From IMG/VR virus record IMGVR_UViG_3300025009_000050, positions 180,053-244,052 of that record: a stretch of 64,000 bases of DNA. One strand, written 5' to 3'. Of the stretch, positions 54,919 to 64,000 are shown piece after piece; the first letter of the stretch is position 1, and each line of letters begins with the position of its first letter. The notes below the pieces were generated by a model, which saw only the letters and a program-made list of their open reading frames with translations, did not search any database and was not told where the DNA came from. The translations under genes were made by a program, and so were the position numbers.

Positions 54919-55461
54919 ATGATGCCAGCTAAGATTGAAAAGTTAATACATGGTGAAACTGTATTCCGAGGAAAAAGGATGGCCGTAAGAGTTGATAAAG
55001 TGCAAGTGGATGATTGTAAGCCTACAATAAGAGAGGTCGTTGAATCTTGTAATGCTGTAGCTATATTAGGTATCGACAAGAGTAACAATATGATCTTTAT
55101 CAGGCAGTATAGGCATGCTGTAGGAAGAATACTTCTAGAACTTCCAGCTGGTAAGATAGATCCAGGCGAATCTAAATATATGGCTGGTCTAAGGGAATTC
55201 AAGGAGGAAACTGGATATACTGCTGGTAGCATTGAGACTCTACTTTCTGGTTTAAGTTCACCAGGATTCTTAACTGAGAATATACATATACTACTTGCAA
55301 CCGATCTCACTGAAGGCAATCCAGAGCCCACAGAGAATGAGAACATAGAAGTAGTCGGGATTCCAATTCCCGATGTATTGGGTAAGATAGATAGTGGTGA
55401 GATCAGCTGCCTCAAATCTATTGCAGCTGTATATGCTTATATGGTAAAAGTTCTTTCATAA
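54919..55461 (+). CDS. nudF: ADP-ribose pyrophosphatase (Nudix)
   Basis: IRQYRHAVG, LELPAGKIDPGE...REFKEETGY Nudix box, SSPGF. Confidence 0.85.
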   Translation: MMPAKIEKLIHGETVFRGKRMAVRVDKVQVDDCKPTIREVVESCNAVAILGIDKSNNMIFIRQYRHAVGRILLELPAGKIDPGESKYMAGLREFKEETGYTAGSIETLLSGLSSPGFLTENIHILLATDLTEGNPEPTENENIEVVGIPIPDVLGKIDSGEISCLKSIAAVYAYMVKVLS

Positions 55462-55641
55462 CTGGAGGTTAATATGTGTTTCTTATGCCTATGCCAGCAC
55501 CTATAATTAAACCGCCGGATATCTCTATTGTTACTCCACCTTCAATAGTAGAGTTAGTGATATTTTATGGGATGATAGGATCGCTATTTATTGCAGTACT
55601 AGTATCTCTATATATATTCATCATTACTTATAGGAGGTAAG

Positions 55642-55812
55642 GTGTATAATTTAGTTAAAAACTGTGGATTCTTCAGTAATGGAATATGTAAATCAGCACC
55701 ATGTTCTAAAACAGGCGATAAGTTTTGCTGTATAAATTGCTCTAAGTTAAGTGCTGACTGCTCTTGTGCAACATTAAGTAGAAGAATAAAGGAGTTAGAT
55801 AACAATGGGTAG
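55642..55812 (+). CDS. 8-Cys family member 7 (56 aa)
   Basis: SD aggaggt, GTG start; CGFFSNGICKSAPC..CCINCSKLSADCSC; not in ORF track. Confidence 0.7.
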   Translation: MYNLVKNCGFFSNGICKSAPCSKTGDKFCCINCSKLSADCSCATLSRRIKELDNNG

Positions 55813-55975
55813 GTGTGTTAGTTGTGGAACTAAGGTCAACAGAGAAGAGAACATGGAAATGCTTGAGGACATATTTGAATCTGTTGACCTGTGTGGTGTT
55901 GAGTCACTACCTGAAGATGCACAGGTTGTCTATGAGGATAAGATGTGCTGGCAATGTTATGAGAAGAGGTGTTAA
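55805..55975 (+). CDS. Small treble-clef-like Zn-finger protein
   Basis: MGRCVSCG...MCWQCYE; SD aaggag. Confidence 0.55.
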   Translation: MGRCVSCGTKVNREENMEMLEDIFESVDLCGVESLPEDAQVVYEDKMCWQCYEKRC

Positions 55976-56029
55976 TTTACTGCTCTCACCTCTTTTCATG
56001 AGAGGTGTATGGAGTAAATTATAGGAGGA

Positions 56030-56383
56030 ATGCTAATGTTTGATGTAAAGGTATTTCAGTTTATACTAACTAATGATAAAATTCTACTTGTTGAAGCAGA
56101 CAGCATATCTGAAGCTTTCCAGGATCAACAGTTGTGGAATTTACGTGCAACTGAAATAAAAGATTTCAAACAGTTGAATTACCTCGAATTAAAAGATAAA
56201 ATAATTTATGCAGCAGACGATGTTGGTATTTTTAAAGTTCAGAATACTAATTTTATTGAAGTTATTAGAAATATTCCTAATTTGAAACAGCGTGATATCA
56301 TTACATGGGAATATGCAAGACATAAACGCATGTATAGAGTTATGATATTCAATACTCATATTATACTTACCACAGCTAATTAG
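56030..56383 (+). CDS. Hypothetical protein
   Basis: SD aggagg. Confidence 0.55.
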   Translation: MLMFDVKVFQFILTNDKILLVEADSISEAFQDQQLWNLRATEIKDFKQLNYLELKDKIIYAADDVGIFKVQNTNFIEVIRNIPNLKQRDIITWEYARHKRMYRVMIFNTHIILTTAN

Positions 56384-56394
56384 GAGGGTGCAAT

Positions 56395-56970
56395 ATGCAA
56401 TATGTTAGTTTGGAAGATAATACTTTAGATCTACAAACTGGCTCAAGAGTCTTCTCAAACTTTATATTTGACTACTTATTTAAGTATAAAGTATATCTAT
56501 TTCAATCCATAGTTGTCATTTGCATAGGAACTGACCGTTCCACAGGTGACAGCTTAGGACCGTTAACTGGACATATACTGAGCTCAATGGATAATGAGTT
56601 CCACTTGTATGGAACATTAGATAAGCCAGTTGGTGCAAGTGATTTAGAAGAAACAATTGAGATAATTAATGCTAATCACCCAGGTGCATTCATAATTGCT
56701 ATTGATGCTTGTCTTGGCAAATCAGAGAATATAGGACATGTACGCATAGAAGATGGCCCTATACACCCTGGATCTGGTGTAAATAAGAAATTACCTCCCG
56801 TAGGATGCATTCATATTATTGGAATAGTAAATGTAGCTGGCTATATGGAATACCTTGTTTTACAAAATACCAGATTGAATATTGTAATGAAGATGGCTAA
56901 CATCATAGCTCCTGCATTGAATTCAGCTATCAGTAGATATAATTTACTAATCAGTAAAACTGCTGTATAA
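56395..56970 (+). CDS. yyaC: Spore protease YyaC (GPR-like)
   Basis: CIGTDRSTGDSLGPLTG, YGTLDKPV, IAIDACLG, PGSGVNKKLPPVG, LQNTRL. Confidence 0.9.
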   Translation: MQYVSLEDNTLDLQTGSRVFSNFIFDYLFKYKVYLFQSIVVICIGTDRSTGDSLGPLTGHILSSMDNEFHLYGTLDKPVGASDLEETIEIINANHPGAFIIAIDACLGKSENIGHVRIEDGPIHPGSGVNKKLPPVGCIHIIGIVNVAGYMEYLVLQNTRLNIVMKMANIIAPALNSAISRYNLLISKTAV

Positions 56971-56971
56971 T
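56943..56971 (+). promoter_or_regulatory. SigA-like promoter for the tRNA-like RNA
   Basis: TTTACT-N17-TATAAT; predicted +1 about 56978. Confidence 0.5.
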
Positions 56972-56977
56972 GAGCTT

Positions 56978-57069
56978 GGGGCCAGCTTAGCCCCGCCAGA
57001 GGAGGAGAGCCTGGGTTCGAATCCCAGTAGCACTGATCATGCTATAGCCAAGTGGTCCAAGGCGCCTCC
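56978..57069 (+). ncRNA. Circularly permuted tRNA-like RNA (YrlA/Y-RNA-like)
   Basis: GGAGG - T-arm CTGGG TTCGAAT CCCAG - TAGCA ctgatca TGCTA - TA - D-arm GCC AAGTGGTCCAA GGC - G - CCTCC. Confidence 0.75.
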
Positions 57070-57093
57070 ATGACTTTATCAAGGAGTGGTTAT

Positions 57094-57492
57094 ATGCAAT
57101 TCATAGTTTGTGCTTGTAGTAAGAATGTTGATACTAGAGCAGTTGATCTTCCTAATATAGAAGTTGGATTAAAACTGCTGGGTGAACTGAGAAAGGCAGC
57201 AGGTAAGGATCTTGATATCTCAGTTATTAAGTCGTATGTAAATTCTTATTCTGAATATAGAGTTGAAATTGCAATTCCTGAAAAACTTGCTATTCAGTGC
57301 AATGATCTATTCAATGATAAGAATATTGTATATATTAAGGTTCCAGATAAGCATCTTAATCAATATGCAAGTATTGTCCCAATTATAGATCTAGAAGGTG
57401 ATATCCCTTCTGCTCACATGGAGTACCATCTTGATGGAGATAAATTCATTAAGGATTGGATGGAGGCAGGATGTCCGACAACATTACTATAA
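57094..57492 (+). CDS. Hypothetical protein
   Basis: SD aaggag before ATG 57094. Confidence 0.55.
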   Translation: MQFIVCACSKNVDTRAVDLPNIEVGLKLLGELRKAAGKDLDISVIKSYVNSYSEYRVEIAIPEKLAIQCNDLFNDKNIVYIKVPDKHLNQYASIVPIIDLEGDIPSAHMEYHLDGDKFIKDWMEAGCPTTLL

Positions 57493-57701
57493 TTGAATGC
57501 ACTGAATTCAAAGATGGGATGTGCAGTATAATGTGCCCCAGATTAAAGAGAAAGATATTGCACGAAGAAGTAGAACCTAACGCGGATTTAATGGTATGCT
57601 GCATAAACTGCTCTCAACTTGAAGCAGATTGTAATTGTGGTACAATTAGAAGTTGCATCAGGAATGGAGTGAAGTTCTTTGTTACACATTCGAACAGCTG
57701 A
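57471..57701 (+). CDS. 8-Cys family member 8
   Basis: CTEFKDGMCSIMC...CCINCSQLEADCNC. Confidence 0.7.
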   Translation: MSDNITIIECTEFKDGMCSIMCPRLKRKILHEEVEPNADLMVCCINCSQLEADCNCGTIRSCIRNGVKFFVTHSNS

Positions 57702-58020
57702 TATGAGTTATAACGGACTTAGTGGTCTTGATATAACAAGAAAGACAGCTGATATAACTGGTGATGAGACATTCGCTCCTAGTTGGAAAATTGTACGTGA
57801 TCATCAACAAGGTAAGATAACTGATGACCAGTACATAGAAGTCTATTATAAGATGATGCTCGATTCACAGATTAAGTATGCTGATAGGTGGAAGTGGCTA
57901 CTAGATCAGAATTATATAGTTCTTAAGTGCTTCTGTAAGAAGAATAAATTCTGTCATAGAATAGTATTAGCCCTGATACTTAAGAGCTTAGGGGCTAAAT
58001 ACTTAGGAGAAGTTGCATGA
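57679..58020 (+). CDS. DUF488/YeaO-like protein
   Basis: DITRK, FAPSW, LKCFC....CHR. Confidence 0.65.
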   Translation: MLHIRTADMSYNGLSGLDITRKTADITGDETFAPSWKIVRDHQQGKITDDQYIEVYYKMMLDSQIKYADRWKWLLDQNYIVLKCFCKKNKFCHRIVLALILKSLGAKYLGEVA

Positions 58021-58202
58021 GTGTATTAAAATGTGAGAATTATGTAGAAGGATATTGTACAAAACATTGTAATACAATTAATCTAGATTGCACAGTAAAC
58101 AACAGAAAGGTTCATTCAATTTGTTGCTTAAATTGTGCTTTAAGAAATAAAAGTTGCTACTGCTCTACAGTAGCAAACCTAGTTGAAATATGGCTTTGCT
58201 AG
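58017..58202 (+). CDS. 8-Cys family member 9
   Basis: CENYVEGYCTKHC...CCLNCALRNKSCYC. Confidence 0.7.
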   Translation: MSVLKCENYVEGYCTKHCNTINLDCTVNNRKVHSICCLNCALRNKSCYCSTVANLVEIWLC

Positions 58203-58331
58203 TTACACTATATGTGTTTCTATACAGTTACGCCATAGGTACCTGCCTAGGTGTAATCTATCCCGTATAAGTTAGTTGATTGACCTTAATAAGCTGGAAG
58301 GAGGTAGCACTTAATTTCACACATCATACTA

Positions 58332-58366
58332 AGGTGGTAGTCTCCTCTACCACCTATTCTTTTTTT
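58332..58366 (+). terminator. Rho-independent terminator
   Basis: aggtggtag-tctcct-ctaccacct followed by a T-tract. Confidence 0.7.
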
Positions 58367-58635
58367 AAGGAGGTGTTCTGATGGGAGATATACTGTTTGG
58401 ATACTTTTTTGTACTACTACTTATTGTACTAACATGCGGTGCTGCGTACGCTATATATATGATGTATTTATCGTTCATAGAAGAAAGGAGGAAGCATAAA
58501 GAGAAAGAAGCTAAATATAAGTTATGACGAGGAGGGAGTAAACTATGGGTTTTTGGTCATATATCGGGTTATTAATATGCATCATGGCTACTGGTGTTAC
58601 CGTCATAGTGCTATATTTTTTAGTCATGACTATCA

Positions 58636-58953
58636 TTGATAATATTAATGATAGGAGGGAAATACGTAATCAAAACAATCAAAGAGATGTTGACCAATAA
58701 TAAACTTGAACTTGCAATAATACTCTTAGCTGGCATTATAATCGCCGTATCTCTGTATCCTATAGGACTTAATGCAGCCATCAAACATACCCTTCAAATA
58801 CCAAGGAATTTATATCCACACCAAGTTATAACTATACTAACATACCTAAGTACAAGTTATTTTTTATATTACGTCCAAGTAATCTTCTTTATATCGATGT
58901 TTAGTGTTGCTGTATTTGGGCTTAAAAAGCATTATACTAGTAGGGCTGAATAG
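58636..58953 (+). CDS. Membrane protein
   Basis: Hydrophobic segments; start uncertain. Confidence 0.45.
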   Translation: MIILMIGGKYVIKTIKEMLTNNKLELAIILLAGIIIAVSLYPIGLNAAIKHTLQIPRNLYPHQVITILTYLSTSYFLYYVQVIFFISMFSVAVFGLKKHYTSRAE

Positions 58954-58969
58954 TATCAGCCCTATTTTT
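58941..58969 (+). terminator. Rho-independent terminator
   Basis: tagggctga-atagta-tcagcccta-ttttt. Confidence 0.7.
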
Positions 58970-59213
58970 GTTGAGAAGGAGTGATGCTATGGATATTGAA
59001 ACATTAAAAGAACATTATGCTAAGAGTGGATTTGTATTCTTCGGTTTTACTGCAGAGGGCAAACTTATATTCGCTCGCAAATGTGTTTCAGGAATTCAGT
59101 ATGTAAAGGTGAAACAAAATGGTATACAAGATACTGGTATACCTGCTATAATATCTACTGAAGATGCAGAAATTATGTATCTTACATATCAAGAATTTTA
59201 CGGAGGTGATTGA
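58968..59213 (+). CDS. Hypothetical protein
   Basis: SD aaggagtga before the internal ATG (MDIETL). Confidence 0.5.
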   Translation: MLRRSDAMDIETLKEHYAKSGFVFFGFTAEGKLIFARKCVSGIQYVKVKQNGIQDTGIPAIISTEDAEIMYLTYQEFYGGD

Positions 59214-59572
59214 GCTGACTAGTTTACTAGATAGCATACCTTTATTAACTATGGATCTAGCCTATGTCGAAAAACCAGATCCTGTGCTTAATGAGAAAAA
59301 GGAGCTTGTACCTGATATAGGTTGGATGCTAAGCCCACGTTTTATCTTAGATATAGGTGTTATAGCTAATAATTGGAAGATTGCTATACTTAATTAGGAG
59401 GATATATGATCTGCATCAATTGTAAGAAGGCTGCTGCACTCAAGAAGAGTTTATTCTGTAGTAAGAAGTGCAGTGCTAGATGGAGATCTGCCTTTGGCAA
59501 TCGAGATGAGTTTAAACTCATTGGTGCTCCTAGACTTAAAGAATTAAAAGAAAAATATTTGGGGGTGTAAAC

Positions 59573-60106
59573 TTGCCACCAAGTCTTAGTGAATTGTTAA
59601 AATTCCTAGGTAATGCCAAGACAGTGAATATTGGATTACTCAGACGTAAGTATAATGCTGAGCAAAACTATGAACTATATAAAGGTAGGCTTGAGGAAGC
59701 CTTTGAAGTATACAGCAAGGAAGAAGCTATAATGGAAGGTCTTAAAGCTCGCTATGAACGTAAAGTTGAGGAACTTAAAGCATACGGTAAAACTCTTCAA
59801 GAGAAATATGCTGAATATGAGCGAGCTGCTGATACGTTAGATGAGATCGATAATGAAATTCTGATGGCTAATGGTAGACCTAAAGTAGAAGCACCTAAAC
59901 CTAAGCCTAAGCCTCGTAAGAAAATGACTGTAGCTGAAGCCTTTGCTGTAATGGAACTGCAACAAACCAGGGACATGAACGTTATCCGTAGTAAATATCG
60001 TGACCTGGCTAAAGTTCTTCACCCTGATAGGAAAGATACAGGGAGTGAGGTAAAGTTTAAAGTTCTCAACGAAGCCCATACTATAATAAAGGAGTGGGCG
60101 GAATGA
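59573..60106 (+). CDS. Coiled-coil protein with C-terminal J-domain
   Basis: IRSKYRDLAKVLHPDR...FKVLNEAH. Confidence 0.8.
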   Translation: MPPSLSELLKFLGNAKTVNIGLLRRKYNAEQNYELYKGRLEEAFEVYSKEEAIMEGLKARYERKVEELKAYGKTLQEKYAEYERAADTLDEIDNEILMANGRPKVEAPKPKPKPRKKMTVAEAFAVMELQQTRDMNVIRSKYRDLAKVLHPDRKDTGSEVKFKVLNEAHTIIKEWAE

Positions 60107-60663
60107 GTATATTAAAGTTCTGGTATACACTGTTCTTTAAATCCAAGTCAACCAAGATAAATGTTATTGGTAATGAGCTTGGTAGTGACGCAAATAATGC
60201 CTCTCTTATGATCTTCCTTTCGTCTATAGTAGTATCTTATGTACTTTATGATATCTTATTCTCACTGCTATCTCTCACAGCATTAATTCATGAAATCATT
60301 GTATTATACATCATACGTAAATATCGTCTTTATTATTCCAACATACAAATGATTGAAAGACAAGAAGTAACAAAAGAGGCCATAAAGGAATGGGCCAAGA
60401 AGATACACGAGGAACGTGCTAAGCTTGCTCAAGAAAAATTAAGTACTACTCAGAGGAATAACCTGATTAGTAAGACAGTTGAGGATTGGCTAGTAGTTCT
60501 AAATCTTGAACCTAAAGTCAGTAGTCTTAATCTAAAGATGATTAAGGATAGGTACTGGAAACTAGCTCAACGTTATCATCCGGACAATAAGGACACTGGT
60601 GATCATGATAGATTTGCAGAGATCAACCAGGCTTATCATAATTTAAATTCATTATTGAGGTGA
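60094..60663 (+). CDS. Membrane-anchored J-domain protein
   Basis: TM segments; IKDRYWKLAQRYHPDN...FAEINQAY. Confidence 0.8.
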   Translation: MGGMSILKFWYTLFFKSKSTKINVIGNELGSDANNASLMIFLSSIVVSYVLYDILFSLLSLTALIHEIIVLYIIRKYRLYYSNIQMIERQEVTKEAIKEWAKKIHEERAKLAQEKLSTTQRNNLISKTVEDWLVVLNLEPKVSSLNLKMIKDRYWKLAQRYHPDNKDTGDHDRFAEINQAYHNLNSLLR

Positions 60664-60923
60664 TAAAAATGGAATTCTATGCACTTGATCTATCACTTTT
60701 AATTATCATGAGCATGTCTATCATTGTCTGTATATACGAGAAACATTATATTCAGGCTGGTACTTGTGTTGGATATATTATAATTATATTGCATACGTTA
60801 TTCGATGCTGCCTTTTCTTCTTTCCCGACTTATGCATTACATCCATTTGTATATATATTAATCTTTGTACAATCATACTTAGTATTCTCATACTTTATAG
60901 ATAATAAAGGAGTAATTCAGTGA
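60660..60923 (+). CDS. Small membrane protein
   Basis: Three hydrophobic segments. Confidence 0.5.
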   Translation: MIKMEFYALDLSLLIIMSMSIIVCIYEKHYIQAGTCVGYIIIILHTLFDAAFSSFPTYALHPFVYILIFVQSYLVFSYFIDNKGVIQ

Positions 60924-61156
60924 TACATGTTCCTTCATTTGGTATATCGGCTCTTATCATTGCAATAATCCTTTTAGTCTATCTTCTATGGAAGAAACAT
61001 CACAATGAAGCATTAGCCTATTTATTTTTTATAGCAGGTGTATCCATAAAGCTGTTTCTTGGCCCTGAGGTGCTAGTGATATCTATGGGCTTTATGTCTC
61101 TTACATTAGGAACTGCAATAGTTTCTATCATCTATAACAATGAGAGGACACTATAA
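60920..61156 (+). CDS. Small membrane protein
   Basis: Three hydrophobic segments. Confidence 0.5.
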   Translation: MIHVPSFGISALIIAIILLVYLLWKKHHNEALAYLFFIAGVSIKLFLGPEVLVISMGFMSLTLGTAIVSIIYNNERTL

Positions 61157-61562
61157 TGTGTCCTCAAAATGACCAAATAGGATTATAAAAGTGACTCAAC
61201 AAGCGGAAGTAGCAATCAGAGGTATATAGTGGGATTTGATCATAGTTATCCTTAAGCCAGTTCTTTATTAGTAATGATTCATTACATTCAGTAGTGTTAT
61301 AGTCTTGTATGATGTAGTTGAGACTTATGCACTTTAATTGTAAATCAGAACTAATCATTCATGAGGTTTAATATCCATTAGTGATTAGTTAGTTCTGATA
61401 AGTGAGTAAACTTACTTCTTTATGATGCATGTTATATATTTATTAATCATGTATCATTAATATATACTCAATGAGTATTGAAGCATTACTAATGAAGAAG
61501 TTTTAAGCTCCCAAAACCATTATACAGTAATGGGCTTATCTGTGTCAAGTTTTATTCCGCTC

Positions 61563-61591
61563 CTTAACATAAACTTAACACTATCTTAACA
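61563..61591 (+). promoter_or_regulatory. Pho-box-like / OmpR-family regulator direct repeats
   Basis: cTTAACA x3 at 61563, 61574 and 61585 (11-bp period). Confidence 0.6.
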
Positions 61592-61607
61592 TTTAGGAAG
61601 TAACAGG

Positions 61608-61796
61608 ATGGAAGAAAAAGAAACGTGTTACCGTTGTAGGTATATGAGACAATATACTCATTTCTATGCTGATTATTCATCTCTGTATGAATGTCTGAAA
61701 CCTAATAATGATCATAACACTTCACTGTACTATGATAAGCGTATGGAAATAAAAGACCCTACAATTAGTAAAGGGTGTTTTGAGATGAAAAAATAG
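61608..61796 (+). CDS. Small Cys-containing protein
   Basis: TCYRCRY...C...GCFE. Confidence 0.5.
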   Translation: MEEKETCYRCRYMRQYTHFYADYSSLYECLKPNNDHNTSLYYDKRMEIKDPTISKGCFEMKK

Positions 61797-61810
61797 ACTA
61801 GGAGGTTACA

Positions 61811-62116
61811 ATGTTTGGTGAATTTATAAGAGAACTTAGAACATCAAAGAATATAACCAAAGAAGATTTCGCAAAGGCAATAGGACTTAAAGACGTGAAA
61901 GGAGTAGATGTGATAGAAGAGAATAAACTTGAAATTGATTCATTTTCACATCTACTAGAACCAATGGCCAATTACTTTGAAGTAGATCTGCATGTGATAT
62001 ATGATCAGTATTACAAGTGTCTTATATCAGAAAGGTTTGCAACTCTTGGAATGTATTATAACAGAATTGTAGATAAACGGGTTAAGGACGAAGTGCTAGA
62101 CAACCTTAAGTTATAG
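61811..62116 (+). CDS. XRE-family HTH regulator
   Basis: FGEFIRELRTSKNITKEDFAKAIGL. Confidence 0.8.
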   Translation: MFGEFIRELRTSKNITKEDFAKAIGLKDVKGVDVIEENKLEIDSFSHLLEPMANYFEVDLHVIYDQYYKCLISERFATLGMYYNRIVDKRVKDEVLDNLKL

Positions 62117-62129
62117 GAGGTGATAGACA

Positions 62130-62549
62130 ATAAAAATCATTCCATATGACGTTAAATACGTTAAAGTTCTTGTTCCACTTCATGTATGTCTTGATCATGT
62201 TGATTTTAAAACATTGATGGATTATTATGACATAACAAGATGGAATACATTCTGTGGAATACCAAATTATCATCAGCATGAATTAATTAATGCAATGGTA
62301 GAGAGACTTGGTTTTTACCCCAATTTATATTATAATGATTATGGTAGTGCAGGTTGGGGCTTTGTGCTTACTGACGATGAAGGTTCAGTGGATACTAATA
62401 ATGTATTTATGCTGAGACTCAATAAAGTAGGCGCATGTATTAATGTGCATGAGGACTTTCCTGAAGCACAAATAATTCCTTTGATTATATACATGAAACA
62501 ACTTATGTTCAACGAAGTTAAGCAGCCATTATTGATTGCTGCTGGTTAG
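62130..62549 (+). CDS. Hypothetical protein (probable ATA start at 62130)
   Basis: SD aggaggtga followed by in-frame ATA; open to the annotated TTG at 62214. Confidence 0.5.
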   Translation: MKIIPYDVKYVKVLVPLHVCLDHVDFKTLMDYYDITRWNTFCGIPNYHQHELINAMVERLGFYPNLYYNDYGSAGWGFVLTDDEGSVDTNNVFMLRLNKVGACINVHEDFPEAQIIPLIIYMKQLMFNEVKQPLLIAAG

Positions 62550-62557
62550 GAGGTTAT

Positions 62558-62998
62558 ATGTTAATTGACATATCAGGTAATCTATTAACTTCTGACTGTA
62601 ATATTATGCTTCATCAAGTTAATTCCTGTGGTAAATTTGCATCAGGTATAGCTGGTCAGATAAGAGAGATGTTTCCCCAAGTTTACCTAGACTATATGAC
62701 CGCTTACAGAAATGGTAGACTTACCTTAGGAAACATAGTAATTACTTACCTACCTAAATTAACATTTGTAAGTATGTGTGCTCAAGCTACTTATGGTAGG
62801 ACAGGTAAGCACACAAATGAAGAAGCATTCAGATTATGCTGCAATAGAGTAAAGCTGTTGATTGATTCTACACCAGGTAAGAAAGTTGGTGTTCCTTGTG
62901 GCATAGGGTGTGGGCTAGGCGGGGCATCATGGTCAGTTATAAGGAACATCATAGATGAAGTGTTTAGGGAGAACACAATCCACATCTATAAGAAATAA
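62558..62998 (+). CDS. Macrodomain ADP-ribosylhydrolase (TARG1/DarG-like)
   Basis: GNLL....IMLHQVNSCGKFASGIA, AQ..YG, PCGIGCGLGGASW. Confidence 0.85.
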   Translation: MLIDISGNLLTSDCNIMLHQVNSCGKFASGIAGQIREMFPQVYLDYMTAYRNGRLTLGNIVITYLPKLTFVSMCAQATYGRTGKHTNEEAFRLCCNRVKLLIDSTPGKKVGVPCGIGCGLGGASWSVIRNIIDEVFRENTIHIYKK

Positions 62999-63021
62999 TT
63001 AAATAAAGGGGAGAGATTAGG

Positions 63022-64000
63022 ATGAGTTTAGAGACACTAGGTCAAAATCCATTATTTCATACCGATACCTATAATCTTGGACATGGGAGTTTCAAGATTG
63101 ATGTTGGCTTTGAGGGGAGCCACATGTACAATAGGGCGGCAGGCCAGATCTTATTTGGTCTTAGTGAGATAGCTAAACGATGTTTGAATGTGATATTAAC
63201 ACACGAACATATTGACAGAGCTATTAATCGGGCCAAGTTTATGAATCTTGAGTTTCCTGAAGCATTATTCAGACGAGTGGTCAATGAGCTTGATGGCCGT
63301 ATACCACTTAAGGTTGAAATGTTGCCGGAAGGTATCTGGTGTCCAAAAGGTACTCCATTTGCTCAGATACAGAACACCGTTAAAGGTTTTGGTGAGCTCG
63401 TTACCTGGTGGGAAGGTAGACTAATGAAGGGCTGGTGGCCCACGGCACTAGCTACAGAAGCCTTTTATATGAGGCAATACTTACTCCAGACTTGTAAAGA
63501 ACATGGATTTGACTGGGAGAAGTATAAGTGGAGATTCCACAGCTTCGGCTACAGAGGTCATAATTCAGAAGAAGCTGCATATTGGGCTGCAATTGCTTGG
63601 CCATTATTCCTGCATGGGACCGATGATTTCTTGGCTGCAGAGCATGCTGGTTCTAGTGCAGTTATAGGTAGTATTCCAGCACTAGCCCATAAGGTAACAC
63701 AGCAGTTTGATGTTGAAATGGACTGTTGTATACGTGCAATTGATGTTGCAGCAGCTAAAGGTTGGGGCATCGTAGCAATGCCAATTGACACATGGGATGC
63801 TAACAAATTTATCAGCAGAAATATGTACTATCTGCTTCACCGTGCAAAGAATGCTGGTGTGCACGTAGTACTTCGCCCTGATTCAGGACTTGTTGTTGAA
63901 CAAGCCATAGAAATATATAAGTCAGTACAAGAAATTGGAACTGGCAATTGTTCAACAATCATTGGAGAATCAATGTCATTGAGGATAGCCAGAATCAGAG
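63022..64000 (+). CDS. nadV: Nicotinamide phosphoribosyltransferase-family enzyme (NadV/Nampt or Namat), truncated by window
   Basis: Manual translation: FHTDTYNLGH, LPEG, FHSFGYRG, GTDD, SIPALAH, IDTWD, LRPDSG. Confidence 0.85.
   Translation, partial: MSLETLGQNPLFHTDTYNLGHGSFKIDVGFEGSHMYNRAAGQILFGLSEIAKRCLNVILTHEHIDRAINRAKFMNLEFPEALFRRVVNELDGRIPLKVEMLPEGIWCPKGTPFAQIQNTVKGFGELVTWWEGRLMKGWWPTALATEAFYMRQYLLQTCKEHGFDWEKYKWRFHSFGYRGHNSEEAAYWAAIAWPLFLHGTDDFLAAEHAGSSAVIGSIPALAHKVTQQFDVEMDCCIRAIDVAAAKGWGIVAMPIDTWDANKFISRNMYYLLHRAKNAGVHVVLRPDSGLVVEQAIEIYKSVQEIGTGNCSTIIGESMSLRIARIR

What the first reader, a model, noticed from the sequence alone, without database searches (positions are those of the whole stretch)
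54919..64000. ADP-ribose/NAD+ counter-defence toolkit: Nudix, macrodomain and Nampt/Namat
Seen: NudF-like ADP-ribose pyrophosphatase, and a TARG1/DarG-like macrodomain directly upstream of a NAMPT-fold enzyme (missed by the ORF track). Known: phage NARP1 (Adps+Namat) and NARP2 (Nampt+Nmnat) rebuild NAD+ depleted by Thoeris/DSR/SIR2 defences, and macrodomains reverse DarT-type ADP-ribosylation. Inference: a combined anti-NADase and anti-ADP-ribosylation module; the partner enzyme may lie just beyond the window.
Basis: partly seen in the sequence, partly recalled or inferred. Interest (0 to 1): 0.6.

Follow-up and report, generated by a model that had tools for sequence, protein, structure and literature searches.

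The report
Phage NAD+ rebuilding operon with macrodomain
A 244-kb phage carries a macrodomain gene, a divergent nicotinamide phosphoribosyltransferase and (just past the record's end) an NMN adenylyltransferase in one tight operon, a variant of the known phage NAD+ rebuilding pathway NARP2 that counters NAD+-destroying bacterial defences.

Summary
The window ends at the end of a 244,052-bp virus record whose ends overlap by 102 nt. The NAMPT-fold gene therefore continues at the record's start (474 aa in all). One base after its stop comes a 184-aa NadM-type NMN adenylyltransferase: the predicted missing partner. Independent assemblies show the same contiguous order.

The complete genome has no PRPP-synthetase-like Adps, and the enzyme lacks both Namat clamp signatures. 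The pathway is therefore NARP2-type (Nampt + Nmnat), not NARP1.

The Nampt belongs to a third, divergent clade. That clade occurs in Bacillales chromosomes (an NrtR-Nampt-Nmnat operon) and in metagenomic phages, and is absent from isolated phages.

The macrodomain is not DarG/TARG1-type: an invariant Gln replaces the catalytic Lys. It is homologous to Adpp, the ADPR-1''-phosphate phosphatase of NARP1-AP operons.

The Nudix gene lies 7 kb away behind two terminators. The genome also holds PnuC and a NadR-like kinase.

Verdict: a new variant of a known kind, of moderate interest.

The parts
54919..55461 (+). NudF-type ADP-ribose pyrophosphatase (Nudix), 180 aa. It is a separate transcription unit from the macro-Nampt operon.
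   Evidence: PF00293 45 bits. NudE/YffH/ADPRase NCBIfam hits are all below cut-off. The best PDB relatives are ADPR pyrophosphatases 8wv3, 9jax, 8zr8 and 1mk1, E 5e-26 to 2e-23. The Nudix box G-x5-E-x7-REFKEETG is intact. An AGGAGG ribosome-binding site lies 6 nt before the ATG.
58332..58966 (+). Two intrinsic-terminator-like hairpins (58332-58355 and 58939-58966) between the Nudix gene and the macro operon
   Evidence: stems of 9 and 11 pairs followed by T runs. The region holds 8 such sites against 3.7 expected.
62214..62549 (+). 111-aa ORF of unknown function. Its stop overlaps the ribosome-binding site of the macro gene.
   Evidence: No Pfam, NCBIfam or PHROG hit. The Atlas search gave nothing usable. 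Sequence.
62558..62998 (+). Stand-alone macrodomain, 146 aa. It is Gln-type and Adpp-like (predicted ADPR-1''-phosphate phosphatase or soluble-ADPR-derivative hydrolase).
   Evidence: Q76 occupies the position of DarG K80. hhalign of the family profile against Vibrio phage Gary Adpp gives 99.8% probability, E 2e-28.
63022..64000 (+). First 326 codons of a 474-aa Nampt-family enzyme of a third clade. The gene continues at G000:C1:103-548 (record start).
   Evidence: (P0001).
63899..64000 (.). 102-nt overlap with the first 102 nt of the record (101/102 identical). It marks a circular or terminally redundant assembly.
   Evidence: Differently permuted contigs.

Best explanation
The core is a three-gene operon: macrodomain, Nampt-family enzyme, NadM-type Nmnat. 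The gaps between the genes are 23 nt and 1 nt, and each gene has a strong Gram-positive-type ribosome-binding site. The phage is a 244-kb jumbo phage that probably infects a spore-forming member of the Bacillales.

Inferred from family and context:
- The Nampt-family enzyme joins nicotinamide to PRPP to give NMN.
- The Nmnat adenylylates NMN to NAD+.
- The pair therefore works like NARP2. It refills the NAD+ pool that SIR2, TIR, SEFIR or RES-type defence effectors empty.

Inferred from homology to Adpp and from position:
- The macrodomain removes the 1''-phosphate (or another small 1''/2'' group) from ADP-ribose derivatives left by NAD+ cleavage.

Inferred from family only:
- The separate NudF-type Nudix splits ADP-ribose into AMP and ribose-5-phosphate.

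Inference:
- Together these two enzymes would return the debris of NAD+ cleavage to the host PRPP and ATP pools that NARP2 draws on.
- A PnuC-like transporter and a NadR-type ribosylnicotinamide-kinase-like protein elsewhere in the genome would give a second entry (nicotinamide riboside) into the same Nmnat.

Shown here: gene identities, gene order, the join across the record ends, absence of Adps, clade placement, and the Gln-for-Lys state of the macrodomain. No enzymatic activity or phenotype is shown.
For: Gene order and join
- The 102-nt end overlap.
- The full 474-aa product P0001.
- Mid-contig copies in other assemblies with the order macro, Nampt, 184-aa gene, 174-aa gene, 50-aa gene, Band_7.

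Nmnat
- NadM and archaeal Nmnat NCBIfam hits, E 6.5e-12 to 1e-10.
- PF01467 at 21.6 bits against a cut-off of 21.
- All PDB hits are NMN adenylyltransferases.
- The H-x-x-H and S-x-T-x-x-R motifs are present.

Nampt
- Catalytic-core residues are kept: D15, Y17, F175, R178, D201, H223, R285, D287, G315, R354, D355.
- It is closer to solved Nampts (80.7 and 72 bits) than to SPbetaL1 Namat 9W5X (42 bits).
- The complete genome has no Pribosyltran_N or Pribosyl_synth gene.

Context of relatives
- An Nmnat homologue lies downstream on the same strand in 20 of 26 related loci (12 of 18 once identical-context copies are merged).
- A Nudix follows in 8 of them.
- A Paenibacillus chromosome has the order NrtR, Nampt, Nmnat.

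Macrodomain
- phrog_335 'phosphatase' at 102 bits.
- The best-scoring phage relative lies inside the Adps-macro-Namat operon of Vibrio phage RYC. That gene is listed as NARP1-associated in Table S1 of bioRxiv 2026.01.28.702374.
- The family profile aligns end to end with the assayed Gary Adpp.

Nudix
- The closest solved relatives are ADPR pyrophosphatases.

Literature
- NARP2 defined as Nampt plus Nmnat.
- Adpp and aRES.
Against: - The Nampt is not in the KVP40-type clade on which NARP2 was defined. It sits on a long branch of its own and scores only 32 bits on PF04095, against 163 bits for KVP40 NadV. Its donor substrate is therefore not proven.
- NARP2 alone already cancels aRES, so an Adpp is not obviously needed next to it.
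- None of the 26 related loci has this Gln-type macrodomain beside the Nampt.
- 56% of jumbo phages carry a macrodomain and 33% carry NadV, so co-occurrence in one genome is expected by chance. Only the adjacency is informative.
- Identity to the assayed Adpp is only 26%.
- Gln-type relatives such as SCO6735 are said, from memory, to remove protein ADP-ribose.
- The Nudix gene is not co-transcribed with the operon.
Confidence: 0.6

Rival explanations
1. The macrodomain is an ADP-ribosyl hydrolase acting on macromolecules. It would reverse DarT-type DNA modification or ART-type protein or RNA modification. The locus would then join anti-ADP-ribosylation with NAD+ refilling.
For: - The best NCBIfam hit is the DarG macro region at 52 bits.
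- The top structural matches include DarG macrodomains at TM 0.82-0.86.
- Relatives place other ADP-ribose removers near the same Nampt: a NADAR-DarT1-type gene in L009 and a Lys-type, TARG1-like macrodomain in L027.
- NADAR next to NadV/NadM in phages is already reported (PMC9503650).
Against: - The catalytic Lys of DarG/TARG1 is an invariant Gln in this family.
- The 52-bit score is far below the cut-off of 250. The bona fide NARP1-AP macro of phage RYC also hits the DarG model, so that hit does not discriminate.
- The protein is 146 aa and has no DarG C-terminal domain.
- The fold search cannot separate DarG, Poa1p, TARG1 and BT1257.
Confidence: 0.2
2. The genes are auxiliary metabolic genes. 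They raise NAD+ for the phage's own replication, as first proposed for KVP40, and have no specific role against defence systems.
For: - The closest cellular relatives form an ordinary NrtR-regulated salvage operon.
- NARP2 makes NAD+ whether or not a defence is active.
- The genome also has PnuC and an RNK-like kinase, which suggests general salvage.
Against: - KVP40 NARP2 has been shown to cancel Thoeris, DSR, SIR2-HerA and aRES.
- An ADPR-derivative-processing macrodomain directly upstream points to the products of NAD+ cleavage.
- The two readings are not exclusive.
Confidence: 0.15
3. The NAMPT-fold enzyme is a Namat-like ADPR transferase that makes NAD+ directly from an activated ADP-ribose (NARP1-like). 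A non-homologous activating enzyme would stand in for Adps.
For: - The SCH-equivalent motif carries two aromatic residues (G-S-G-Y-Y), unlike the G-G-G-L-L of KVP40-type Nampts.
- An Adpp-like macrodomain is otherwise known only next to Namat.
Against: - The complete genome has no Adps/Prs family gene.
- Position 3 of the SCH motif is Gly, as in Nampt. The aromatic positions 3 and 7 of the Namat consensus are missing, and the SCL loop is the shortest of the three clades.
- An Nmnat lies directly downstream here and in 20 of 26 relatives. It would be redundant if NAD+ were made directly.
- The score against the solved Namat is lower than against the solved Nampts.
Confidence: 0.05
4. The macrodomain clears ADPR-1''-phosphate or the 1'',2''-cyclic phosphate made during RNA repair. 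Its link would then be to the nearby RtcB rather than to NAD+ salvage.
For: - RtcB lies 4.5 kb downstream.
- RNA ligases sit near NAD salvage genes in L016, L027, phage Gary and phage PG07.
- Poa1p, the yeast homologue, has this role.
Against: - The genome has no Tpt1/KptA 2'-phosphotransferase, the enzyme that generates this by-product.
- From general knowledge, RtcB ligation leaves no 2'-phosphate.
- The macro gene is coupled to the Nampt gene, not to rtcB.
Confidence: 0.05

Closest known systems
NARP2 of Vibrio phage KVP40 (NadV Nampt + NatV Nmnat-Nudix; bioRxiv 2024.02.11.579819)
   Same: A Nampt-family enzyme and a NadM-type Nmnat in one phage, with no Adps. An ADP-ribose-type Nudix is also encoded. 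The expected chemistry is nicotinamide + PRPP to NMN to NAD+.
   Different: - The Nampt belongs to a separate, long-branched clade: at most about 30% identity to any Nampt or Namat in 50,697 phage records, and 32 against 163 bits on PF04095.
- The Nmnat is a stand-alone 184-aa protein. The Nudix is a separate NudF-type gene 7 kb away, not a NatV-type fusion.
- A macrodomain gene leads the operon.
NARP1-AP (Adps-Adpp-Namat) of Vibrio phages Gary and RYC (bioRxiv 2026.01.28.702374)
   Same: A Gln-type stand-alone macrodomain of about 150 aa lies directly upstream of a NAMPT-fold gene. It is homologous to Adpp: 33.6% identity to the RYC protein, and profile-to-Gary probability 99.8%.
   Different: There is no Adps, the downstream enzyme lacks the Namat clamp, and an Nmnat follows. 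ADP-ribose is therefore not a direct substrate of the pathway here. The macrodomain is only 26% identical to the assayed Gary enzyme.
Bacterial NrtR-regulated nadV-nadM salvage operon (Paenibacillus; NrtR family in PMC2330246)
   Same: The same Nampt clade (54% identity) with the same stand-alone Nmnat directly downstream.
   Different: The cellular operon has an NrtR regulator and no macrodomain. The phage copy sits among phage genes.
DarG / TARG1 macrodomains
   Same: The same macrodomain clade by fold (TM 0.82-0.86) and by weak sequence matches.
   Different: The catalytic Lys is replaced by Gln. There is no DarT-binding C-terminal domain and no DarT neighbour.
NARP3 (PnuC + NadR; PMC13464706)
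   Same: The genome has a PnuC-like transporter and a NadR-RNK-like P-loop kinase.
   Different: The two genes are about 70 kb apart, not an operon. The kinase has no fused adenylyltransferase domain, so the Nmnat of the macro operon would have to serve.

Membership tests
NARP2 | Nampt homologue and Nmnat homologue encoded by the same phage | tested here: met
   The Nampt-family gene runs from window 63022 across the record junction. The Nmnat is at G000:C1:550-1104, one base after the Nampt stop.
NARP2 | The Nampt falls in the KVP40-type clade, distinct from Namat | tested here: not met
   The tree of 20 sequences gives three clades. This family is separated from KVP40-type Nampts plus Namats by a fully supported long branch (SH-aLRT 100). 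It is a quick tree with midpoint rooting only and no outgroup.
NARP2 | No Adps in the genome | tested here: met
   PF13793 and PF14572 gave no match at E<=1 in the complete 244-kb record. The controls were positive in 14 of 14 genomes.
NARP2 | [quoted passage not shown] | not testable with these tools
   Needs enzyme assays and plaque assays.
NARP1 (Adps + Namat) | Adps (PRPP-synthetase-like) next to the NAMPT-fold gene | tested here: not met
   The neighbours are a macrodomain and an Nmnat.
NARP1 (Adps + Namat) | Namat selectivity clamp: the SCH motif G-S-aromatic-x-aromatic-x-aromatic-x-T-R-D and an extended SCL loop (PMC12774641) | tested here: not met
   This protein has G-S-G-Y-Y-K-H-L-E-R-D, with Gly at position 3. 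Its SCL region is 6-12 residues shorter than in six Namats. Motif definition.
Adpp (macrodomain of NARP1-AP) | Homology to the assayed Adpp / Poa1p-like macro family | tested here: met
   BLASTP against Gary Adpp gives E 5e-7 and 26% identity. hhalign of the family profile against Gary Adpp gives 99.8% probability, E 2e-28, over the full length. tblastn against the RYC Adpp gives E 2e-10 and 33.6% identity. The profile matches Poa1p at E 1e-16.
Adpp (macrodomain of NARP1-AP) | Placed in a NARP1 operon (within two genes of Adps and Namat) | tested here: not met
   It is adjacent to a NAMPT-fold gene, but that gene is not a Namat and there is no Adps.
Adpp (macrodomain of NARP1-AP) | ADPR-1''-phosphate phosphatase activity | not testable with these tools
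   Needs an assay with purified ADPR-1''-phosphate.
DarG / TARG1 glycohydrolases | Catalytic lysine (TaqDarG K80, TARG1 K84) | tested here: not met
   In the profile alignment to 5m31 and 5m3i, the family's invariant Q76 falls on the first K of P-T-K-K-H-W. In contrast, the L027 macro has T-K.
DarG / TARG1 glycohydrolases | DarG architecture (macro plus C-terminal DarT-binding domain, about 340 aa) and a DarT neighbour | tested here: not met
   The protein is 146 aa. The NF048014 match covers only model positions 5-146 of 338, at 52 bits against a cut-off of 250. The neighbours are an unknown 111-aa ORF and the Nampt. The genome was not searched for DarT.
NudF / ADP-ribose pyrophosphatase Nudix subfamily | Intact Nudix box and closest similarity to characterised ADPRases | tested here: met
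   Box present. The top 10 PDB hits are ADPR pyrophosphatases or NudF.
NudF / ADP-ribose pyrophosphatase Nudix subfamily | Score above the curated NCBIfam cut-offs | tested here: not met
   NudE 81.8 bits against 169; TIGR00052 46.6 against 79.55.
NadM/archaeal-type Nmnat | Nucleotidyltransferase H-x-G-H-type and S-x-T-x-x-R motifs; profile matches | tested here: met
   G-R-F-Q-H-F-H-L-L-H near the N-terminus and S-A-T-D-L-R near residue 142. PF01467 scores 21.6 bits against a cut-off of 21. The NCBIfam Nmnat models hit at E 1e-10 to 6.5e-12 but below their cut-offs.
NARP3 (PnuC + NadR) | Adjacent PnuC transporter and bifunctional NadR | tested here: not met
   PnuC-like gene at G000:C1:11689-12267, 85.8 bits. 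The RNK-like kinase at 81546-82175 is separate and lacks the adenylyltransferase domain.

The most novel reading that the evidence does not exclude
The Adpp-like macrodomain, the NudF-type Nudix, the third-clade Nampt and the stand-alone Nmnat form a closed recycling loop, a 'NARP2-AP'. The steps would be ADPR-1''-phosphate to ADP-ribose (macrodomain), ADP-ribose to AMP plus ribose-5-phosphate (Nudix), ribose-5-phosphate to PRPP (host Prs), then NMN and NAD+. The phage would reach the economy of NARP1-AP without an Adps. It would also show that a so far uncharacterised Bacillales clade of NAMPT-fold enzymes works in phage counter-defence.
Probability: 0.3. Interest if true: 0.6.

Novelty: new variant of a known kind. 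Interest (0 to 1): 0.42.

Why it matters
NAD+ depletion is among the most common outcomes of bacterial anti-phage defence, and phage NAD+ rebuilding pathways (NARP1, 2, 3 and NARP1-AP) have only recently been defined.

This locus shows three things:
- The NARP2 logic also exists with a Nampt clade absent from isolated phages. That clade was apparently taken from Bacillales salvage operons.
- The ADPR-1''-phosphate-phosphatase-type macrodomain, so far tied to NARP1, can also lead a Nampt-Nmnat operon.
- One jumbo phage can hold several entries into NAD+ synthesis: nicotinamide, nicotinamide riboside, and perhaps recycled ADP-ribose.

If the macrodomain matters in this setting, then clearing or recycling ADP-ribose derivatives is useful in itself, not only as a feeder for Adps. 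The practical value is a small set of enzymes to assay, plus a search rule (this Nampt clade next to an Nmnat) for annotating metagenomic phages.

Tried and rejected
- Megablast of the 9-kb region against 50,697 phage records: no match.
- The search for related loci with the single Nampt piece: no relatives. The alignment-based scan then found 24 loci.
- The sigma-70 promoter scan gave fewer sites than shuffled sequence (38 against 47). No promoter is claimed.
- Pfam, NCBIfam and PHROG scans of about 25 small ORFs between 52.5 and 62.5 kb gave nothing related to NAD or ADP-ribose.
- Atlas searches of the two unknown operon neighbours (the 111-aa ORF before the macro gene and the 178-aa ORF after the Nmnat) gave no usable lead.
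- Tpt1/KptA is absent.
- The DUF488-N3a protein was considered as a possible ADP-ribose enzyme. The literature places DUF488 in the ParB/Srx fold with no NAD link, so it was dropped.
- The fold search of the macro model cannot separate DarG, Poa1p, TARG1 and BT1257. Subfamily assignment rests on sequence motifs and operon context.
- Macro homologues in giant Escherichia and Xanthomonas phages are stand-alone genes near tRNA nucleotidyltransferase, not near Nampt.
- The careful tree did not finish in time. The quick IQ-TREE result is reported.
- Not used: the reads tools, complex prediction, and a second structure job (a Nampt model would not decide the donor substrate).

Full report
**Where the window lies.** The window is bases 180053-244052 of a single 244,052-bp virus record that CheckV rates complete. 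The last 102 nt of the record repeat its first 102 nt with one mismatch. The record is therefore a circular or terminally redundant assembly cut inside a gene. G+C is 33-45%, and the genes from about 36 kb onward are on the + strand.

**Checking the observation.** ORF listing and family scans confirm the three genes.
- 54919-55461 encodes a 180-aa Nudix protein (PF00293, 45 bits). Its closest solved relatives are ADP-ribose pyrophosphatases from Bacillus-type organisms, M. tuberculosis, Bdellovibrio and Thermus (E 5e-26 to 5e-21). The Nudix box is intact.
- 62558-62998 encodes a 146-aa macrodomain (PF01661, 38 bits).
- 63022-64000 is the open 5' part of a NAMPT-fold gene (PRK09198, 131 bits).

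**Joining across the record ends.** The reading frame continues at positions 103-548 of the record and gives a 474-aa protein. The protein database holds exactly this product (P0001). Twenty-one other contigs carry it. Two were inspected, a differently permuted 244,136-bp contig and a 53-kb contig; both have the gene in mid-contig with the order macro, Nampt, 184-aa gene, 174-aa gene, 50-aa gene, Band_7. The join is therefore real, and this is why the gene looked 'missed'.

**The partner.** One base after the Nampt stop, behind a GGAGG site, starts a 184-aa gene (record 550-1104).
- It hits the cytidylyltransferase-like family (PF01467, 21.6 bits against a cut-off of 21).
- In NCBIfam it hits only NMN adenylyltransferase models of the NadM/archaeal type (E 6.5e-12 to 1e-10, below cut-offs).
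- All its PDB matches are NMN adenylyltransferases.
- It carries the two-histidine nucleotidyltransferase motif and an S-x-T-x-x-R motif.

The partner is an Nmnat.

**NARP1 or NARP2.** The literature defines NARP1 as Adps plus Namat and NARP2 as Nampt plus Nmnat. Four results point to NARP2-type chemistry.
- The complete genome has no PRPP-synthetase-family gene. PF13793 and PF14572 gave no match at E<=1, while both controls found the families in 14 of 14 reference genomes.
- The published Namat signature is an SCH motif G-S-aromatic-x-aromatic-x-aromatic-x-T-R-D plus an extended SCL loop. I aligned six Namats that sit beside an Adps, four phage Nampts that sit beside an Nmnat, and ten members of this protein's family. 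The Namats show G-S-[YF]-[TS]-[YF]-[QA]-[YF]-x-T-R-D. The KVP40-type Nampts show G-G-G-L-L. This family shows G-[SAG]-G-[FY]-Y, here G-S-G-Y-Y-K-H-L-E-R-D. Position 3 is Gly as in Nampt, and the SCL region is the shortest of the three groups.
- The core residues that bind nicotinamide and the ribose phosphate, and the phosphorylated histidine, are all kept.
- The N-terminal piece scores 80.7 bits against Xanthomonas Nampt and 72 bits against human Nampt, but 42 bits against the solved SPbetaL1 Namat, 9W5X.

**A third clade.** A maximum-likelihood tree gives three well-supported groups. This family is separated from Namats plus KVP40-type Nampts by the longest branch. It is a quick search with midpoint rooting only.
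- The full protein reaches 32 bits on PF04095. KVP40 NadV reaches 163 bits and the Gary Namat 110 bits.
- No record among 50,697 phage genomes holds a relative above about 30% identity.
- Relatives at 46-54% identity are numerous elsewhere. In a Paenibacillus chromosome the gene follows an NrtR-type regulator and precedes a 185-aa cytidylyltransferase-like gene, a normal salvage operon. In Bacillus methanolicus it stands alone. In a B. cereus-group contig it sits among phage-like genes with the Nmnat.
- An alignment-based scan found 24 loci in IMG/VR.
- Of 26 related loci (about 18 distinct contexts after merging identical copies), 20 have an Nmnat homologue downstream on the same strand (12 of the 18 distinct contexts). 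In 18 of the 20 its open frame begins within about 50 nt of the end of the Nampt match. Eight have an ADPRase-like Nudix 0.65-2.2 kb further on.

The steady pairing with an Nmnat argues that the product is NMN, because an Nmnat would be redundant for an enzyme that makes NAD+ directly. This is inference; the clade has not been assayed as far as I could find.

**The macrodomain.**
- By fold it belongs to the DarG/TARG1/Poa1p/BT1257 group. The model has pLDDT 97 and TM 0.79-0.89 to all of them, so structure cannot separate them.
- The exhaustive protein search found 5,052 relatives, mostly stand-alone proteins of about 150 aa.
- In an alignment of 66 of them, G30, Q76 and W125 are invariant.
- A profile of that alignment aligns with the DarG macrodomains so that Q76 falls on the first Lys of P-T-K-K-H-W. 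From my knowledge of the DarG literature, that is the catalytic K80. BT1257 and SCO6735 share the Gln.
- The weak DarG NCBIfam hit (52 bits against a cut-off of 250) is also given by the NARP1-AP macro of phage RYC, so it does not discriminate.
- The protein scores 102 bits on phrog_335 'phosphatase'.
- Its best-scoring phage relative (E 2e-10, 33.6% identity) is the middle gene of the Adps-macro-Namat operon of Vibrio phage RYC. That gene is listed among the NARP1-associated macro proteins in Table S1 of the aRES preprint.
- The assayed Adpp of Vibrio phage Gary aligns over its full length with the family profile (99.8% probability, E 2e-28; pairwise 26% identity, E 5e-7) and has the same Gln.
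- That preprint shows Adpp converts ADPR-1''-phosphate, the product of RES-domain NADases, into ADP-ribose.
- By contrast, the only macrodomain found near a Nampt among the relatives (L027) is of the Lys type.

**Operon structure.**
- The stop of the unknown 111-aa ORF overlaps the macro gene's ribosome-binding site.
- The gap from macro to Nampt is 23 nt, and from Nampt to Nmnat 1 nt.
- All four starts have strong GGAGG-type sites.
- No convincing terminator lies inside this stretch. Two good ones lie at 58.3 and 58.9 kb, between the Nudix gene and the operon.

The Nudix gene is therefore a separate unit. Its link to the operon rests on function and on the Nampt-Nmnat-Nudix clusters of relatives, and on KVP40, where Nmnat and Nudix are fused.

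**Wider genome.**
- There is only one Nudix and one macro gene.
- A PnuC-like transporter lies about 11 kb past the Nmnat (85.8 bits).
- A stand-alone P-loop kinase matching the ribosylnicotinamide-kinase part of NadR lies at 81.5 kb.
- There is no Tpt1.

Relatives show the same toolkit in other combinations: Nampt-PnuC-NadR-Nudix in L029, and NADAR plus PnuC around the Nampt in L009.

**Host.** The Bacillales-only cellular relatives of the Nampt, a YyaC-like DUF1256 gene, a SpoIIID gene in the related jumbo phage and the strong Shine-Dalgarno sites suggest a spore-forming Bacillales host. This is inference.

**How it most likely works.** Nicotinamide released by a defence NADase is joined to PRPP by the Nampt-family enzyme. 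The NMN is adenylylated by the Nmnat, and the NAD+ pool is refilled, as shown for KVP40 NARP2. The macrodomain most likely removes the 1''-phosphate (or another small group) from ADP-ribose derivatives, and the Nudix splits ADP-ribose to AMP and ribose-5-phosphate. Together they could return the ribose phosphate and the adenylate to the pools that NARP2 consumes. The preprints name this PRPP drain as the weakness of NARP2.

The weak points are these:
- NARP2 alone already cancels aRES.
- The macro adjacency is not seen in the relatives.
- Macrodomains and NadV are each common in jumbo phages, at 56% and 33%.
- No activity has been measured.

**Comparison and novelty.** The pair works like NARP2 but fails one membership feature, the clade of the Nampt. 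The macrodomain is a homologue of Adpp but is not in a NARP1 operon. A full-text search found no paper that links a macrodomain with NARP2. The general association of ADP-ribose-processing domains such as NADAR with phage NadV/NadM genes is already described. I therefore rate this a new variant of a known kind, of moderate interest.

Noticed in passing
window 63899-64000 = G000:C1:1-102: The record is labelled linear, but its ends overlap by 102 nt (101/102 identical). Another assembly of the same phage (244,136 bp) is permuted. The genome is therefore circularly permuted or terminally redundant, and the cut falls inside the Nampt gene.
   Followed up: yes
G000:C1:11689-12267 and G000:C1:81546-82175 (outside the window): A PnuC-like nicotinamide-riboside transporter (PF04973, 85.8 bits) and a stand-alone P-loop kinase matching the ribosylnicotinamide-kinase part of NadR (AAA_28, 61 bits). 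Together with the Nmnat they could form a split NARP3-like route. The kinase lies next to a Pth2 peptidyl-tRNA hydrolase gene.
   Followed up: partly
G000:C1:1775-2740 (L003): A Band_7/SPFH (prohibitin-like) gene lies three genes after the Nmnat. Rhizobium phage B1VFA likewise has a prohibitin-family gene three genes after its Nampt. This is a recurring neighbour with no explanation yet.
   Followed up: no
G000:C1:5559-6782 (L003); L016, L027, L042, L043: An RtcB RNA ligase lies 4.5 kb downstream of the Nmnat. RNA ligases also lie close to NAD salvage genes in relatives (RtcB 1.4 kb after the Nampt in L016; an RNA ligase between Nmnat and macro in L027) and in Vibrio phages Gary and PG07.
   Followed up: partly
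L009/L010 (IMGVR_UViG_3300047321_000238, 247,883 bp); L027; L029: Relatives put other ADP-ribose or NAD genes around the same Nampt clade. L009 has a NADAR-DarT1-type gene 3.5 kb upstream and PnuC 5.6 kb downstream, with an unrecognised 242-aa gene in the Nmnat position. L027 has a Lys-type, TARG1-like macrodomain. L029 has the order Nampt, PnuC, NadR, Nudix.
   Followed up: partly
window 59573-60106 and 60094-60663: Two adjacent, overlapping ORFs of 177 and 189 aa. Each has a C-terminal DnaJ (J) domain (about 40 bits each) and an N-terminal part with no recognised family.
   Followed up: no
window 56395-56970: A DUF1256 (YyaC-like, germination-protease-related) protein scoring 197 bits. The same family lies 1.4 kb after the Nampt in the related jumbo phage L009/L010, next to a SpoIIID-like gene. 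This hints at a spore-forming host.
   Followed up: no
window 57679-58020: A 113-aa protein of the 'active DUF488-N3' subclade (42 bits; phrog_2450, 81 bits), function unknown. The literature places DUF488 in the ParB/Srx fold.
   Followed up: partly
window 61144-61548, minus strand: The only minus-strand unit in a long plus-strand block. It has a perfect TTGACA-18-TATAAT promoter match (61548 to 61519), a 64-aa ORF (61358-61164) and a terminator-like hairpin (61165-61144). It sits in the 450-nt gap upstream of the macro operon block.
   Followed up: no
window about 36000: GC skew and AT skew change sign at about 36 kb (negative before, positive after). This matches a switch of coding strand and marks a divergent transcription or replication boundary.
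   Followed up: no
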